Positions 6,101-45,100 of a stretch of 64,000 nucleotides of DNA are shown here, piece after piece. This DNA comes from Eutreptiella sp. 'Long Island Sound 2002' (Eukaryota > Protista > Euglenida). Position 1 is the stretch's first letter, and each line of letters starts with the position of its first letter. The notes beneath the pieces are model-generated. The model saw only the letters and a program-made list of their open reading frames with translations, was not told the origin of the DNA and ran no database searches. The position numbers and the translations under genes are program-made. Where the stretch lies: positions 164,548,001 to 164,612,000 of the forward strand of contig OZ038378.1 of assembly GCA_964036045.1 (NCBI GenBank). The letters run 5' to 3'.

Positions 6101-9100
6101 ATACAAACCGAAAAAAACACAACAAACAACAAAAAAAAATGCAACAAAACAAAAAAGAACAACAAAAAACACTGCAAGACAAAAATTACGCAAAGACAGA
6201 ACAAAATATTCCAACAAACTGACACATGGGCGGGGGGGGGGGGGGGGGCTGTGTCTGCGACGGAATGTGGGTGAGGGGTGGAAGGTGTGCGTGCGTGCGT
6301 GCGTGCGTGCGTGCGTGTGTGCGTGCGTGCGCGTGCGTGCGTGCGTGCGTGCGTGCGTGCGTGCGTGCGTGTGTGTGTGTGTGTGTGTGTGTATGTGTGC
6401 GTGCGTGTGTGTGTGTGTGTGTGTGTGTGTGTGTGTGTGTGTGTGTGTGTGTGTGTGTGTGTGTGTGTGTGTGTGTGTGTGTGTGTGTGTGTGTATGCGC
6501 GCATGAAAACAACACCATATCATAGAGGAAGGCCTGCATGGGTCTCCGCTTTAGCTCTCAATGCGAGGGCACTCTCTGCATCGCCCTCGCCCCTGAAAAG
6601 GGCGAGCTACCGGCGCCCTCCCGCAGATGTCCCCTCCCCCAGGCCAGAGCCTTTGTGTAGGAGACGGTTATGAGCATTCCGTACCCGCACGGCCGTGCCG
6701 CTCCACCGTGCGCCCACGCGTGTGTGTGCGTGCGCTTGTGTCTGTGACTGTGTGCGTCTGTGTCGTGTCTGTGCCTGTATGCTGCAGCTTGCGACCCCAT
6801 GGCGTCCAGTCTGCTGCCGCAGCGTCGGCAGGCCCCACCTCATGGCCGTGAGGAGCGGAGGCTGCTCTCCACCACAACCGCTGTGGGGCCAGCGGTGAAC
6901 ATGCGACACCGGGATGACCCATGGTGCACCCGCGGTGGTGTGAGGCATTCTCTGCCCGGCGCACGGGGCCTTTTACCCTCTAAACGACCCCCACATGAAT
7001 GCATGCGTAGGCAAAACATGGTGAGGCTTCAATTCAACAACGCGGCCCAAGAGCCCAAATATCCATAGCCCCGAGCCGTGTTTGGGCAAAACATGAGCGG
7101 TCTGCAACGCAGGGTACACCAACTGTGAAAGAAAGGCAGCAGATTGTCGTTCCCTTCCGTCGACACGGCAGCACAGCAACACGCCCTGGGGTACACAAAA
7201 TGCCCAAAAAGATGCCCCGCGTGCCCCGTGCGCCCCCCGCGCAGCACATTTCCCTCCGTGCGGCTGCGTTCATCTCTGGTGGGATGGTGGGCGAGGCCCG
7301 CCGGGGTGCCCACAGCCGCAGACGGTCCGTCGCATTGCCGCTCTACATTCGCGCCGCAAGGCAGGGGCCCATACCTTCAGAATGATGCAAACTGCCGACA
7401 TCGTCTTCTCCACGGCCTTGGGGGCGTTGACGTAGCCTCTGATCTCGCCGATGTCGTTCTTGTTGAGCGAATCCAGCGACTTGAGGGCCCCCTCGAGTTC
7501 CGGCAGCGCCTCGTCCAGATCCTTCTGGGCGTCCGCCTGCAGCGCCGCTGCCACCGACTGCTGCTCTGCAGCCTCCGTGGCCACGAGGGATACATCCTTC
7601 TGGATCTCGCTCGCCTGGGGAGGTGGCGGTGGTGCGTGCGTGCGTGCGTGCGTGCGTGCGTGCGTGCGTGCGTGCGTGTGCGAAGAGCTGCAAGGGTATG
7701 CAATGGGGCCTGCATGAACAAGACCCAGAACACGAGCCCAGTCGAAGTTTCGCGGCCGTGGGAATGACTGAATTCCCAGCCTCTGCGAGCGCCGCCACCG
7801 GGGCAGTGAGGCTGCCACTGCCACTCTCACCCTCCAAACTGCAGCTCCGTGCCCCCCACAACCCCTACCCCCATGCCCCCGCACAAACGACCAGACGAAC
7901 AACAAAAGCAGGACGCACGAAAGCCAAAGCGCCCGATTGCCCCTGCGGAACCCCTGTTTGACATTCCGTCTGGTTGTTCCTTTACGGGGCCCTGGACAGT
8001 CACCCGTTCTTCCCTTCGCATGTTGCGTCGGGTCGCTGCTTTCTGTCGGCCGCTGCGGCCGGTGCTCTTGCTGGTGTCGTTTCCGCGTTCGCGGAGCCCA
8101 GTAGTTGGTGTGCTGGGGCTGTGCTGAATGTGGCGGGATGTGCCGTTTGCGCGTCAGCGGCGCCCAATAGTTGGCGTATAGTTGGCCCCCCCCGGCTCAT
8201 GTCGGACCAGAAGGGGTCGAGATGGTGAGGCACAGCGGTGGGGCACTGCACCTTGGCCTTTCGCACGGTCAGATCCGCCATCATCGCCTCGGTTTTGGTG
8301 CGTGCCTCTTGCAAGAGCGGCTGCATTTGGGTGAGCTCCACTTGCATGACGTCCACCTCCGCATTGGTTTCCTGTTCCACAGCGATGGGCAGTCGTGCAG
8401 TCGGCGGCAGTGCCCATCGAGGGCGAGGACCGTTCCCTCCTGCACAAGGCCTAATCCCCAGTCCCCTCTGCACACAGCGCGCACGAGCAACACTCCACTG
8501 TGCCATGTCCGTGGCAACCCAGCCTGTGCAGAGGGGACTGGGCCCAGCGCTCCGCAGGGCTGGTACTGCGGCTGGAGCTGCGCAGGGCTGTCCTTAAGGG
8601 GGGAAAGAAAAGAAAAAGAAAAGGGTTCGTAACACCAACAAAGACGAACGTTCACGGGGACGCCCTCTGCTTCATGGTTATTCTCTTCTTCAAAGGTTGG
8701 CGTTTGGCGGTTGGCGGCTGGTGGCTGGTGGCGGTTGTCGGCGGTTGGTGGTTGGCGGTTGGTGGTTGGCGGCGGTTGGCAGCGGTTGGCAGTTGGCAGT
8801 TGGTGGTCCGTGGGGCTGTCCTTAAGGGCTGTCCTGAACAAAAAAAAAAATCTGGGTTCTTTCGGAGAGCCCTGGAGCTGTGTGACGCTGCGAATTCCCT
8901 CACGAGTCTCCGTCCCTACAGACCGCCTCGCATGCGCCCTTTCACGCTTCTGCGTCCTTCGGCCTGCCATCGGCTGATCGGGCAGCGGACCACCAGAACA
9001 ACGGCTTCTCTCAAACCGCTTTGGAAGCGCCGAGAGCAGCGGTGAACAGATCGGCCTCACCGATACAGCCCGCTACAAGTCAACTCCTGTCACCAGCACG

Positions 9101-42100: not shown

Positions 42101-45100
42101 ACCTTTTCCCCTATCACTGCTCTGCTTCTGCCTCTTCCCCTATCACTGCTCTGCCTGTTCCCCTATCACTGCTCTGCCTCTGCCTCTGCCTCTGCCTCTA
42201 CCTCTACCTCCTCCCTATCACTGCCTCTGCCCGTGCCCTTGCCCCTCCCTTCGGTAGCTGAAGCTACCGCTAGAATGGTGCGTTATCACCCAGCCCACAC
42301 AGCCCAGCATTTCAGGGGAATGCCTCCATCGGGCAGTGGCTACCTCGATTTGTGTCATGATCTCCTCGACAGAGCCCAGCGTGTACACGTCCTTGTAATC
42401 CTTGTACGGGTTCACGATGAATTCCACGGGCTTCGACTCAGTGCTGCCACCTGCCCAGACCTTGCTGACCTACAACAACACAGTGGGGGATGGGGGGGTT
42501 TGGCACAAGGCCTCGGTATCAGATTGTTTGCCTTTGGCGGCGCCTATTGGCCTCTCGCCCTTGCACATTCTGGCCCTCTGTGGGTCCGAACGTGTTTTGG
42601 TTGTGTCAACGGAGCCCCCGGATGACTTGTCCTGTTTGACTACTCCAGGGGTCGGCTGTCCCGGAGACGGGCTGTTGCCCGTGCCGTTGACCAGGTGCAT
42701 CCAGATGCACACTCCGAGTCCATGCGGGGGTTTGCCGACTCCAGCACTGACTTGTGCGCGCTGGGGTGTGCATCTGCAGCATAAATTTCCTCACAGGGCC
42801 TTCTAACAACCACAATGATTCTTTCCCTTTTTTCCTTTCCTTCTCCTCCTTCTGCGCTCTGCACCGTTTTTGGTGGGGGTTGGGGGGCAGGGGGTCTGGC
42901 CGCATAAGAGGGAACATGCTAGGGCAGGGTCCAGTCCAGCGGTTACTTGGCAATAGGGCAAATGGGGGGGGTACGGGGAACTGGGGGGAACCGGATAAGA
43001 GTTGGTGGGCGACGGATCGGCGGCGGGGGGGGGTATTCTGTGGTATACTCGTAGTGCAGTGCCATGCCTTTGGTGTGGCCCTGTGGTTGTTGATCAGGGT
43101 GAGTCCCCTGCATACCCATACCCCCTATTGGGGGGCAGGAAGACCATCAAAGGCGGAGTAGGTGTGCCAGTTGGTACCTCCGGTCTCACACACTTTGGGT
43201 GTGATTTGGGGCACGCCTCTGGGGCTGTGGGTCGGGTGGGAGGGGGCAGCACAATGGTGGGGGAAAGGAGGTTTGTGGTGTACTTGTGTGGAACGTCCGT
43301 CTCACTGTCCCCGGTTGCCGCTTGTTTCCAAGTGTAGCCTGGGAAATGGAGTTTCGCTTGGGAGCCCTGTGCAGTCATGTGCATTATGGACAAAAATCGC
43401 ACCATGGCCCATGGGGCCATTGTGGCTGCCTTGGGTACCTCCATTTTGCCCTGTTGGAGAGCTTGTCCGGGCCCCGCATGGTGCCCAGAGGGCGCACTGT
43501 AGGTGACCAGGCACTCCGAGAGCGCTCGCAAGGCGCGAGGAGGGCACGCTGCAAATGGCCAAGCGCCTTAAGAACGCTTGCATGGCACCGCAGATGACCC
43601 GGTGCCCCGAGAGCACCCATGTGGTGCCTTGAGGGCACATTGTAGATGACCTGGCGCCCGGTGAGCGCCCACATGGCGCCCTGAGGGCGCACCGTAGATG
43701 ACCAGGCGCCGCAAGAGCACCCGCATGTTGCGTGGAGGGCGCATTGCAGACGACCTGGCACCCAGAGCACGGTAGCATGGCGCCCTGAGGATGGGCCCCG
43801 AGGGCACACTGCGGATGAATAGGCTGCCCGAGAGCGCCCGCATGGCGTCCTGAGGGCGCACTGCAGATGACTTGGCGCCCCGAGAACACCCATGCGGTGC
43901 CCTAAGGGCATGTTAGAGATGACCTGAGGGCAGACCGTGGATGACCAGGTGCCCCGAGAGCAGCCACGTAGTCTCGTGAGGGCGCCTTGTAGACAACGTG
44001 AAGCCCCGAGAATGCCCACATGGCACCCTAAAGGTACATTGCACATGACTTGACGCCCTGAAAGTGCTTGCATGGCGCATTGCAGATGACCCGGCGCCCC
44101 GAGAACACCCATATGCACCCGGCGCCACTCCCATCCCTGGCACGGCGCAGGTGCCTGCCGCCATGTGCCAACCCCCCCTGTGTGACATTCCCTCCCGTTG
44201 TTGTTTCTGAACGGGGCCCTGGACAGTCACCCGTTCTTCCCTTCGCATGTTGCGTCGGGTCGCTGCTTTCTGTCGGCCGCTGCGGCCGGTGCTCCTGCTG
44301 GTGTCGTTTCCGCGTTCGCGAAGCCCAGTGGTCGGTGTGCTGGGGCTGTGCTGGATGTGGCAGGATGTGCCGTTTGCGCATCAGCGGCGCCCAGTAGTTG
44401 GCGTGTTGGAGTTGTGCTGGTTGTTACGGGGGTCATTTGACTGTTTTTGCTGTCCACACACCTCCGTCCCCCCCTTGGCCCCCCAAACCCTGTGGAGGGA
44501 TGCGGGAGATGCGGCCGTCCCACTACCCGTGTGAACAAGATGGAAATTGAAGAAAACACATCACACACGTGGAGGGGGTTGAGACGACTCCATGGGTGTC
44601 CCCCACTGCTGGCCCTTGTCCACCGTCGGCCAGCCCCTCTGCTCCACCCTAAAGACGTCCCAGCGGGAGGCGGGCCACTCTCCCCCATGCGGGCTGGCAA
44701 TCCCCCCACCCCCGCAGAGAGAGCGCGATTGGGGCGGAGAGCCTGATGGGCTCAGGGGTGCTGCACAAGGATGGGAGTCTGAGGGTCCGCCTCATCCCAC
44801 CACGGGACGTCTTCAGGGTGTCCGATTTACCAGAGCCAATCGCGGGGAACGGGGGGGGGGGGGCTTCTGATGAGGGAGTAATGTGCCTGTGGCACATGTC
44901 CATCCCCAATAATCCCCTTGGCCAGATGTGTAGTATGGCCCGTGTGTGGGTGTGTGGGTGGGAGGGTGGGTGCGTTGGTGCTTGGTGAGGGGGGATGTCA
45001 CTGTGCGCGCGCATCTTGGGGGGGACAACATAGTAATGTCTTGTGCCGTTGGACATAAAAGCCCAGTAACCAGGGAAGGGGGGGGGGGGGGTTGTGGCAT

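What the first reader, a model, noticed from the sequence alone, without database searches (positions are those of the whole stretch)
7955..44467. Retroposon-like family that joins G-runs instead of poly(A): 8 copies in one gene
Seen: eight copies (7955, 14906, 17727, 22023, 25220, 32187, 33541, 44179) share one fixed end, ...GGAATGTCACAC(A), always followed on the element strand by a G-run. The other end is variably truncated (140-498 bp). Two copies have long flanking duplications that begin at that G-run: 17 bp at 17710/18225 and about 39 bp at 21984/22227. The rest sit between homopolymer tracts. There is no TIR, no poly(A) and no credible ORF. Established: a fixed 3' end, 5' truncation and variable-length TSDs are the signature of target-primed reverse transcription (L1 primes from a T-rich nick on poly(A)). 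Inference: here a C-run 3'-OH primes on a G-rich RNA end, i.e. a non-autonomous retroposon mobilised by a G/C-tract-targeting RT/endonuclease. I do not recognise the family.
Basis: partly seen in the sequence, partly recalled or inferred. Interest (0 to 1): 0.82.

Follow-up and report, generated by a model that had tools for sequence, protein, structure and literature searches.

The report
G-run-seeking, RT-less retroposon of Euglena
The eight repeats are cut-short tails of a young 6.4-kb jumping gene of a Euglena-type alga that copies itself through RNA, lands at runs of G, carries its own large protein gene but no copying enzyme, and so must borrow one; similar G-run targeting is already known for Penelope-like elements.

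Summary
All eight window copies share the end GGAATGTCACAC(A), are followed by 4-16 G, are cut short at the 5' side, and two have 17- and 39-bp duplications that begin with the G-run.

The genome is a 2.28-Gb euglenid: the Euglena spliced leader occurs 7,483 times. Genome-wide, the end is followed by GGGG 6,071 times and by a non-G 520 times.

The copies are not a small SINE-like family. They are 3' pieces of a ~6.4-kb element made of a 312-nt leader, one ~1,097-aa ORF and a 2.75-kb A/C-rich tail.
- The ORF has an OTU-like motif, a zinc finger, two SH3/KOW-like modules and a DnaJ domain.
- It is under purifying selection.
- No RT or endonuclease was detectable.

Paralogous empty sites show the G-run was already in the target. 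Young copies carry almost exactly five G, so a G5 tail is probably part of the element and pairs with the nicked C-run.

The RT donor was not found. The RT elements I could read end at (TG)n or (TCC)n.

The scan has already reported a G-run-targeting Penelope-like element and DUB/J-domain "toolkit" Penelope-like elements elsewhere in this genome. Craig et al. 2021 report (C)n targeting for the Chlamys clade. I rate it a new variant of a known kind.

The parts
7955..8179 (-). Copy 1: 3'-terminal ~225-233 bp of the element (94% to a young copy). Its 3' end is at 7955, followed by G4 (+ strand 7951-7954). A G8 run lies 6 nt upstream of the 5' junction (~8186-8193).
14906..15270 (-). Copy 2: 3'-terminal ~365 bp (92%). 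The 3' end is followed by G16 (~14890-14905). A G10 run lies 2 nt upstream of the 5' junction.
17727..18224 (-). Copy 3: 3'-terminal 498 bp and the youngest copy (98.4%). It ends ...AGAATGTCACACA and is flanked by a 17-bp TSD.
17710..17726 (-). 3' copy of the 17-bp TSD of copy 3 (G5 + TACCTCCCCCCC).
   Evidence: paralogous empty sites
18225..18241 (-). 5' copy of the 17-bp TSD of copy 3. The G-run continues upstream to 18249 (13 G in all). This G-run-TACC-C-run is a native part of a host repeat.
22023..22226 (+). Copy 4: 3'-terminal 204 bp (95.8%).
21984..22022 (+). 5' copy of the long TSD of copy 4 (G14 + 25 nt, 39 nt).
22227..22267 (+). 3' copy of the long TSD of copy 4 (G16 + the same 25 nt, 41 nt).
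25220..25360 (-). Copy 5: 3'-terminal ~141-146 bp (92.5%). It has G9 after the 3' end and a G14-16 run directly at the 5' junction.
32187..32662 (-). Copy 6: 3'-terminal ~476 bp (91%). G9-C-G9 follows the 3' end, and GGGGAGGGGGAGA lies at the 5' junction.
33540..33766 (+). Copy 7: 3'-terminal ~227 bp (88%). It ends ...GTCACAC with no final A, then G14. A G5-T-G7 run lies 5 nt upstream of the 5' junction.
44179..44469 (-). Copy 8: 3'-terminal ~291 bp (89.5%). It has G7 after the 3' end and G-runs at the 5' junction.

Best explanation
The eight repeats are dead-on-arrival, 5'-truncated copies of a young, abundant retroposon of a euglenid.

Anatomy of the full element (~6.4 kb):
- a ~312-nt leader;
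- one ~1,097-aa ORF: disordered N-terminus, hydrophobic helix, OTU-like Cys-box motif, PHD/C1-like zinc finger, two SH3/KOW-like modules, a DnaJ J-domain and a conserved ~120-aa C-terminal domain;
- a 2.75-kb A/C-rich untranslated tail whose last ~150 nt are strongly conserved and hairpin-rich, ending ...GGAATGTCACACA-GGGGG.

It encodes no recognisable reverse transcriptase or endonuclease, so it must be copied in trans.

Proposed mechanism:
1. A nick is made in the C-run strand of a G/C homopolymer tract.
2. The exposed C-run 3'-OH base-pairs with the G5 tail of the element RNA and primes cDNA synthesis. This parallels the T-run/poly(A) pairing of L1.
3. Reverse transcription usually aborts, which gives the 5' truncation.
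4. The second nick falls 0-35 nt downstream. The TSD is therefore 'G-run + 0-25 unique bases', and often G only.
5. Every insertion leaves fresh G-runs that serve as new targets.

Shown: the anatomy, the copy-number gradient, the pre-existing G-run target, the TSDs, the modal G5 tail and selection on the ORF.

Inferred: priming by C/G pairing, dependence on a foreign RT, and that the donor is most likely a Chlamys-type Penelope-like element. That class is published to favour (C)n, and other agents of this scan reported it in this genome both with G-run targeting and with a DUB/PHD/KOW/J-domain 'toolkit'.
For: Organism:
The dinoflagellate spliced leader occurs 0 times.

Fixed 3' end and G-run:
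- 8 of 8 copies in the window.
- All ~30 fetched genomic copies.
- Genome-wide, the 13-mer end is followed by GGGG 6,071 times and by a non-G 520 times.

5'-truncation gradient:
- 6,071 exact 3' ends.
- 2,065 first-look candidates for the last 498 bp.
- 283 for the region 2.6-3.6 kb from the 3' end.
- 113 for the region 4.8-5.5 kb from the 3' end.
- About 30-40 copies reach the 5' end.

True 5' end:
- At least 25 copies, including subfamilies at 83-89% identity, start at L049:766, with ragged starts over the next 16 nt.

ORF:
- L051:3-2765 is open for 921 aa. P0022 supplies the N-terminus.
- Pfam finds DnaJ at 6e-17 and nothing RT- or EN-like. PDB-sequence and NCBIfam searches find the J-domain only.
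- A 929-aa metagenomic relative with the same domain spacing has Pfam OTU (2e-5) plus DnaJ.

Selection:
- Variants shared by two or more copies are 32 synonymous to 16 non-synonymous. Random change would give 24% synonymous.

Target:
- Five paralogues of the host repeat carry the uninterrupted G-run-TACC-C-run where copy 3 sits.
- Of 24 independent copies with both junctions, 23 have G>=4 at the 3' side.
- At the 5' side, 19 have a G>=4 run within 7 nt of the junction and 2 more have it inside the TSD. For scale, a G>=5 run ends within 6 nt of a random window position with probability 0.026.

G5 tail:
- Of 12 copies at 97% identity or more, 8 have exactly G5, 2 have G6, 1 has G8 and 1 has G4.
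- A copy in an A-rich site still ends GGGG.

New targets made by insertions:
- In L042 one copy starts inside the G16 tail of another.

Conservation:
- The last ~150 nt are conserved and hairpin-rich.

Precedent:
- Chlamys Penelope-like elements insert in (CA)n and (C)n, and TSDs are often indiscernible (PMC8557442).
Against: - No RT-bearing relative or partner sharing either end was found.
- Every RT element I could read has another tail. Six FRDN-motif RT families end at (TG)n. The young APE/RT LINE beside the window ends at (TCC)n.
- The window of the scan's reported G-run-targeting Penelope-like element contains no TCACACAGGGGG, so it does not share this family's terminus.
- I saw only about 10 copies of the coding part. 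Rare master copies with an extra RT segment cannot be excluded.
- Domain calls other than DnaJ rest on motifs. Both AlphaFold models were unusable (pLDDT 34 and 46).
- No allelic empty site and no RNA 3' end were seen, because only short contigs could be laid on the stretch.
- The synonymous excess could be inflated by transition or CpG bias.
- There is no covariation support for the 3' hairpins.
Confidence: 0.68

Rival explanations
1. The 6.4-kb form is only the abundant deletion derivative of an autonomous Chlamys-type Penelope-like element. That parent would carry the toolkit plus GIY-YIG endonuclease plus RT, and would share this leader and tail. The family would then be a Penelope-like subfamily, not a separate kind of element.
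For: - Unchecked scan notes describe Penelope-like elements in this genome whose polyprotein joins an RT to DUB + PHD + 2xKOW + DnaJ, and 'one copy lost its copying part'.
- An 8.7-kb G-run-targeting Penelope-like element is noted. That is about 2.3 kb longer than this element, roughly the size of an RT.
- The domain order of this ORF matches that toolkit.
- (C)n targeting is a published Chlamys trait.
Against: - All ~10 coding copies read are collinear and lack any RT segment.
- The ORF ends at the same conserved C-terminus in relatives down to 30% identity.
- There is no similarity to the RT-element ORFs in hand.
- The noted element's window lacks this family's terminal 12-mer.
- Subfamilies 11-17% diverged already have the same RT-less leader and N-terminus.
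Confidence: 0.3
2. The element is mobilised by an APE-type LINE that also uses C/G-run priming, not by a Penelope-like element.
For: - A first-stage note describes a LINE with a C-run TSD and no poly(A) tail in this genome (s1-202992).
- Euglena LINEs with non-poly(A) microsatellite tails are common: (TG)n in L059 and (TCC)n in L064.
Against: - That LINE could not be read here.
- The two LINE families I did read have other tails and no similarity to this element.
Confidence: 0.15
3. Insertion does not depend on an endonuclease. G/C homopolymer tracts are fragile through slippage, G-quadruplex or i-motif formation, or breaks. Any RT then extends a broken C-run end annealed to the G5 tail.
For: - G>=6 runs are very frequent, 1.7 per kb per strand in the DNA held.
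- Several unrelated families in this genome are reported at G/C runs.
- Many insertions have no TSD beyond the G-run.
Against: - Clean 17- and 39-bp TSDs with an intact host repeat indicate two staggered nicks rather than random breaks.
- The mode of exactly G5 at young 3' junctions suggests an ordered reaction.
Confidence: 0.1
4. There is no target preference. GGGGG is simply the last five bases of the element, and the flanking G-runs reflect a G-run-rich genome.
For: - Young copies mostly have exactly G5, and one copy in an A-rich site still ends GGGG.
- The genome is rich in G-runs.
Against: - 19 of 24 5' junctions have a G-run within 7 nt, against a window background of about 0.026 for a G>=5 run within 6 nt.
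- TSDs begin with the G-run.
- Paralogous empty sites show that the insertion point lies in a native G-run.
Confidence: 0.04

Closest known systems
Chlamys-clade Penelope-like elements (Craig et al. 2021, PMC8557442)
   Same: - Strong insertion bias for (C)n and (CA)n tracts.
- TSDs are variable or indiscernible.
- 5' truncation occurs, with occasional tandem or inverted arrangements.
- They occur in protists and algae.
- By unchecked scan notes, Euglena members carry a DUB/PHD/KOW/J-domain toolkit like this ORF.
   Different: - This element has no detectable TERT-like RT, no GIY-YIG endonuclease and no CxC linker.
- No pseudo-LTR was seen.
- It has a defined G5 tail.
- The host is a euglenid, for which I found no published Penelope-like description.
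HAL1 'half-L1' elements of mammals (from my own knowledge: Bao and Jurka 2010)
   Same: It is a protein-coding retroposon that keeps a non-RT ORF while relying on an RT supplied in trans.
   Different: - HAL1 is a clear L1 derivative with L1 ORF1 and a poly(A) tail.
- Here the ORF is a DUB-like/J-domain protein, the tail is G5, the target is a G-run, and the parent is unknown.
L1/Alu priming of a T-rich nick on poly(A)
   Same: - The logic is the same: the TSD begins with the homopolymer complementary to the primer.
- The RNA tail pairs with the nicked strand.
- 5' truncation and variable TSDs occur.
   Different: - The homopolymer is G/C rather than A/T.
- The tail is short (mode 5) and apparently templated rather than added after transcription.
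Microsatellite-tailed or microsatellite-targeting non-LTR elements (R1-clade Waldo, Mino and Kibi; CR1/L2-type tails; from my own knowledge) and the (TG)n- and (TCC)n-ending Euglena elements seen here
   Same: The 3' tail matches the repeat at the target. Insertions sit in simple repeats, so TSDs are hard to see.
   Different: - The repeat unit is a single base.
- This element is RT-less.
- The relatives seen here use (TG)n or (TCC)n.
Dualen/RandI LINEs of Chlamydomonas (Kojima and Fujiwara 2005, from my own knowledge)
   Same: It is a retroelement polyprotein carrying an OTU-type cysteine protease.
   Different: - Dualen has APE, RT, RNase H and RLE.
- None of these is present here, and no J-domain is reported for Dualen.

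Membership tests
TPRT-type retroposon (generic) | One fixed 3' end with variable 5' truncation and a copy-number gradient | tested here: met
   There are 6,071 exact 3' ends. First-look candidates fall from 2,065 to 283 to 113 moving upstream, and about 30-40 copies reach the 5' end.
TPRT-type retroposon (generic) | Target-site duplications of variable length around an otherwise intact target | tested here: met
   TSDs of 17 and 39 bp were read directly. Others are G-run + 0-8 nt. Five paralogues give an intact empty site.
Penelope-like elements (Chlamys clade) | TERT-related reverse transcriptase | tested here: not met
   Pfam, NCBIfam and PDB-sequence searches find no RT in the ORF. There is no YxDD or FRDN motif. 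tblastn and BLASTP against the Euglena FRDN RT elements held find nothing.
Penelope-like elements (Chlamys clade) | GIY-YIG endonuclease, N-terminal with a CxC linker in Chlamys | tested here: inconclusive
   There is no family hit. A weak 'VWYLIC...VGVYT' resemblance in the C-terminal domain could not be tested because the model was unusable (pLDDT 46).
Penelope-like elements (Chlamys clade) | Insertion bias for (C)n/(CA)n | tested here: met
   The published trait is quoted.
Penelope-like elements (Chlamys clade) | Pseudo-LTRs and complex tandem or inverted insertions | tested here: inconclusive
   - One tail-in-tail tandem was seen in L042.
- One inverted 138-bp 5' fragment was seen in L065.
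- The 2,928-bp triplication on C9 includes flanking DNA, so it happened after insertion.
- No pseudo-LTR was seen.
LINE (non-LTR retrotransposon, autonomous) | APE or RLE endonuclease plus RT in ORF2 | tested here: not met
   The single ORF has neither domain.
SINE | Short (<~700 bp), non-coding, internal Pol III promoter | tested here: not met
   The element is 6.4 kb with a 1,097-aa ORF. No tRNA, 5S or 7SL family was found by Rfam.
ORF-bearing non-autonomous LINE derivative (HAL1-like) | Keeps the partner's non-RT ORF and shares its termini | not testable with these tools
DNA transposon / Helitron | Terminal inverted repeats or Helitron termini, fixed-length TSD, both ends fixed | tested here: not met
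   Only one end is fixed. TSDs range from 0 to 39 bp. No inverted termini are seen.

The most novel reading that the evidence does not exclude
This would be a distinct kind of 'semi-autonomous' retroposon. The lineage, already 11-17% diverged into subfamilies, has no reverse transcriptase. It nevertheless keeps a 1,100-aa deubiquitinase-like/J-domain protein under purifying selection and hijacks a foreign RT through a G5 tail that pairs with nicked C-runs. In other words, it is a protein-coding parasite of Penelope-like or LINE machinery, whose own protein serves proliferation, for example by recruiting Hsp70 and removing ubiquitin from the RNP.
Probability: 0.3. Interest if true: 0.72.

Novelty: new variant of a known kind. 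Interest (0 to 1): 0.55.

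Why it matters
- It gives a clean natural example of tail/target base-pairing in target-primed reverse transcription with G/C in place of A/T. The evidence includes an intact paralogous empty site and a short, apparently templated tail.
- It helps explain why this euglenid genome is so rich in G-runs, since each insertion makes new target runs.
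- The family also shows that a retroposon can shed its RT yet keep a large chaperone- and ubiquitin-related protein under selection. That makes the role of host proteostasis in retrotransposition testable.
- Euglena transposons are essentially undescribed. About a third of the published assembly is 'unknown' repeat (PMC11252322).

Tried and rejected
Limits on fetching DNA:
- I walked upstream from the 498-bp copy. Apparent 'full lengths' of 650, 1,052, 1,500, 1,650, 2,590 and ~6,300 bp each turned out to be the truncation point of the copy used as reference.
Later DNA came only through the look-up of encoding contigs.

Empty-site and RNA tests:
- Read laying on 17200-23100 with four runs returned only short contigs broken at repeats. 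It showed no bridging or empty-site joint, so it is uninformative.

RNA family searches:
- Rfam found nothing in the window, in the element's 3' end, or in the RT elements' 3' motif.

Partner hunt:
- RT-motif scans of about 400 kb of held DNA found only one RT fragment, at window 2827-4187.
- Six FRDN RT families (L056-L062) all end at (TG)n.
- The LINE next to the window, read from L064, ends at (TCC)n.
- None of these shares sequence with this element.
- The window of the scan's reported G-run-targeting Penelope-like element lacks this family's terminal 12-mer.

ORF comparisons and structure:
- ORF1 of the neighbouring LINE is unrelated to this ORF.
- The ORF's C-terminus shows no similarity to the RT-element ORFs.
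- The protein atlas gave no usable hit.
- AlphaFold gave pLDDT 34 for ORF residues ~177-576 and 46 for the C-terminal domain, so I ran no fold search.
- The relatives P0084 and P0067 lie on contigs too short to give context.

Other:
- Dinoflagellate origin is rejected, because the dinoflagellate spliced leader is absent.
- The flank of copy 4 has no paralogue in the held loci.

Full report
**Observation**

Chance would give 0.63, and none of 100 shuffles reached 8.

Aligned to a long genomic copy, the eight repeats are all anchored at one end. They extend 146-505 bp from it, at 88-98% identity.

On the element strand each copy is followed by an optional A and then 4-16 G. A random window position starts a G>=4 run with probability 0.0077.

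Two target-site duplications can be read directly:
- GGGGGTACCTCCCCCCC at 17710-17726 and 18225-18241.
- G14 + 25 nt at 21984-22022, repeated at 22227-22267 with 16 G.

Six of the other junctions have a G-run ending 0-6 nt before the 5' junction, against a background of 0.026.

**Organism**

- The window lies at C1:164,548,001-164,612,000 of a 2.28-Gb assembly.
- The dinoflagellate spliced leader is absent.
- The genome is therefore a euglenid, Euglena gracilis or a near relative.
- It is not the published 46-chromosome assembly, whose largest chromosome is 121 Mb (PMC11252322). C1 here is 201 Mb.
- The repeats sit in introns of a dynein heavy-chain gene on the minus strand.

**What the family is**

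The 498-bp copy is not a complete element. Thirty near-identical genomic copies (97-99%) continue upstream.

Repeated walking showed that each apparent 5' end was only the truncation point of the copy used as reference. The 5' terminus was finally placed at L049:766:
- At least 25 copies start there, including subfamilies only 83-89% identical.
- Nine more start raggedly within the next 16 nt. That pattern is not expected if the element continued upstream.

The full element is about 6.4 kb:
- a ~312-nt leader;
- one ORF of ~1,097 aa, with its ATG at L049:1078. The N-terminal 253 aa are P0022, and the C-terminal 921 aa are open in L051:3-2765;
- a ~2.75-kb A/C-rich non-coding tail that contains a ~415-bp indel polymorphism.

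Copy numbers fall steeply from 3' to 5':

| Part of the element | Count |
|---|---|
| Exact 3' ends followed by GGGG | 6,071 |
| First-look candidates, last 498 bp | 2,065 |
| First-look candidates, 2.6-3.6 kb from the 3' end | 283 |
| First-look candidates, 4.8-5.5 kb from the 3' end | 113 |
| Copies reaching the 5' end | ~30-40 |

Together with the variable duplications, this is the classical signature of target-primed reverse transcription.

**The protein**

- Pfam finds only a DnaJ domain (6e-17) plus a weak C1/PHD-type zinc finger.
- PDB-sequence and NCBIfam searches find only the J-domain.
- By eye the ORF also has a disordered N-terminus, one hydrophobic helix, an OTU-type Cys-box motif (PPDGLCLFHA) and two SH3/KOW-like repeats. 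These repeats match repeat proteins P0048 and P0071.
- A ~120-aa C-terminal domain ends at the same residue in relatives down to 30% identity.
- A 929-aa metagenomic relative (P0084) with the same spacing carries Pfam OTU (2e-5) and DnaJ.
- There is no RT or endonuclease signal, and no similarity to the RT elements I could read.
- Among 11 copies, variants shared by two or more copies are 32 synonymous to 16 non-synonymous. Random change would give 24% synonymous. Singleton variants are 66 to 104.
- The protein was therefore under purifying selection in the lineages that proliferated. Mutation bias could inflate this somewhat.
- Both structure predictions were unusable.

**The G-run: target or tail?**

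It appears to be both.

Evidence that the target already held a G-run:
- Copy 3 sits in a dispersed host repeat.
- Five paralogues of that repeat (L037, L042, L035, L056 and window 20688-20882) carry an uninterrupted ...CTGGAG-(G)n-TACC-(C)n-TTCCA... exactly where the insertion lies.
- The G-run therefore pre-existed, the 17-bp duplication is real, and the insertion was precise.
- Among 24 independent copies with both junctions, 19 have a G>=4 run ending within 7 nt of the 5' junction. Two more have it inside a longer duplication.
- Duplications always begin with the G-run. By the geometry of target-primed reverse transcription, this places the first nick in the complementary C-run.

Evidence for a templated tail:
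- Of 12 young copies (97% identity or more), 8 have exactly G5 at the 3' junction, 2 have G6, 1 has G8 and 1 has G4.
- Their 5' flanks carry 5-16 G.
- One copy inserted in an A-rich site still ends GGGG.
- Genome-wide, the 13-mer end is followed by GGGG 6,071 times and by a non-G 520 times.

The simplest reading is an RNA ending ...CACACAGGGGG, whose G5 pairs with the nicked C-run. The junction then shows the larger of five G and the number of target G to the right of the nick.

Insertions also create targets. In L042 a 1.6-kb copy starts inside the G16 tail of an older copy. Hits on C1 cluster at 0-32 Mb and from 140 Mb on; the list of 100 places ends near 159 Mb, and the window at 164.5 Mb holds eight more copies.

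The last ~150 nt before the tail are nearly invariant even in copies 10-14% diverged overall. They fold into several GC hairpins, without covariation support. This region is a plausible recognition signal for the RT.

**Who supplies the RT?**

This was not resolved.

- A scan of about 400 kb of held Euglena DNA found one RT fragment in the window itself (2827-4187, minus strand). Its catalytic motif is QFRDN.
- Six related families fetched from the ENA assembly of the same genome have ~1,000-aa RT ORFs. All end at (TG)n and share a conserved 3' motif.
- The young APE/RT LINE next to the window, read from L064, ends at (TCC)n.
- None of these shares sequence with this element.

Unchecked notes of other agents report, elsewhere in this genome:
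- an 8.7-kb Penelope-like element that targets G-runs (s1-222733);
- a LINE with a C-run duplication (s1-202992);
- Chlamys-type Penelope-like elements whose polyprotein joins an RT to DUB + PHD + 2xKOW + DnaJ, with 'one copy lost its copying part' (s1-192976, s1-195161).

I could not read those loci. I could show only that the window of s1-222733 holds no TCACACAGGGGG, so it does not share this family's terminus.

Craig et al. 2021 state that Chlamys elements commonly insert in (CA)n and (C)n (PMC8557442). A Chlamys-type Penelope-like element is therefore the most likely donor or ancestor. This is an inference, not a result.

**Comparison and verdict**

- The element works like an L1/Alu system with G/C in place of A/T, and like microsatellite-tailed LINEs with a one-base unit.
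- Its target preference matches Chlamys-type Penelope-like elements.
- It fails membership of Penelope-like elements, LINEs and SINEs on their defining enzymes or size.
- The nearest functional analogue is HAL1, a retroposon that keeps a non-RT ORF (from my own knowledge).
- I found no paper on Penelope-like elements in Euglena.
- The scan had already found G-run targeting and the DUB/J-domain toolkit on other DNA of this genome, so the principle is not new here.

New in this report:
- the delimited 6.4-kb RT-less, protein-coding family and its abundance;
- the selection on its ORF;
- the modal G5 tail;
- the paralogous empty site.

I rate it a new variant of a known kind, of moderate interest.

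**Limits**

- Read laying gave only short contigs.
- Dfam and Repbase could not be consulted.

Noticed in passing
window:2827-4187 (minus strand): A 5'-truncated copy of an RT element with the catalytic motif QFRDN instead of YxDD. It starts after a G7 run and ends at a (TG)n tract. It is 98.7% identical to L056:9715-11076. Pfam does not recognise the RT.
   Followed up: partly
L056:7715-11076; L057, L058, L059:7388-11000, L060:9644-13250, L061, L062: Six diverged families (45-67% aa identity) of this FRDN/FQDN RT element have ~1,000-aa ORFs. All end at (TG)n. All share a 3' motif, CAGAAAGGCGCCTAGCC...GGCCTGACGAG, that looks like a hammerhead core. Rfam gives no hit.
   Followed up: partly
window:~2525-2555 (minus strand): A near-copy of the Euglena spliced leader (TTTCTGAAGTGTCTATTTTTTTTTG) lies directly after a long (TG)n tract, just downstream of the RT fragment. 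It may be a spliced-leader relic or a spliced-leader RNA gene fragment.
   Followed up: no
L064:~9580-18500 (same family as L036, beside the window): A young LINE with a 906-aa ORF1 and a 1,531-aa ORF2 (APE + RVT_1). The ORF1 cluster has 50 members. It ends in (TCC)6, not poly(A), and tRNA-like sequence lies at its 5' end.
   Followed up: partly
window:17431-17726 + 18225-18520, window:20688-20882; L037, L042, L035, L056: A dispersed host repeat carries an internal G-run-TACC-C-run. It provided the target of copy 3. It may be related to the poly-G/poly-C-ended pogo-type mini-elements noted elsewhere in the scan.
   Followed up: partly
L055:9041-17834 (= G000:C9:20.645-20.654 Mb): A 2,928-bp tandem triplication (99.4-99.6% identical units) spans ~700 bp of flanking DNA plus the first 2.2 kb of a 5'-truncated element copy. 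It is therefore a duplication that happened after insertion.
   Followed up: partly
L065:8623-8760 versus 9273 onward: An older copy (89%) has a 138-bp piece of its own 5' region in inverted orientation about 500 bp upstream. This resembles L1 twin priming or the inverted arrangements of Penelope-like elements.
   Followed up: no
G000:C13:7,844,169 / 7,868,130 / 7,892,154 (L005, L004, L015) and C13:21,047,836 (L014): The same 1.5-kb insertion with identical flanks recurs at ~24-kb spacing, so it lies inside a large tandem segmental duplication.
   Followed up: no
G000:C1, list of pattern hits: The element's 3' ends are dense at 0-32 Mb and from 140 Mb on (the list of 100 places ends near 159 Mb) and sparse at 32-140 Mb. 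This suggests arm-biased insertion or retention.
   Followed up: no
window:3979-5403 (minus) and L036:5242-6102 (minus): Exons of a dynein heavy chain are present: the microtubule-binding stalk (Pfam 1e-17) and the AAA lid (6e-33). The whole window is mostly intron packed with repeats.
   Followed up: no
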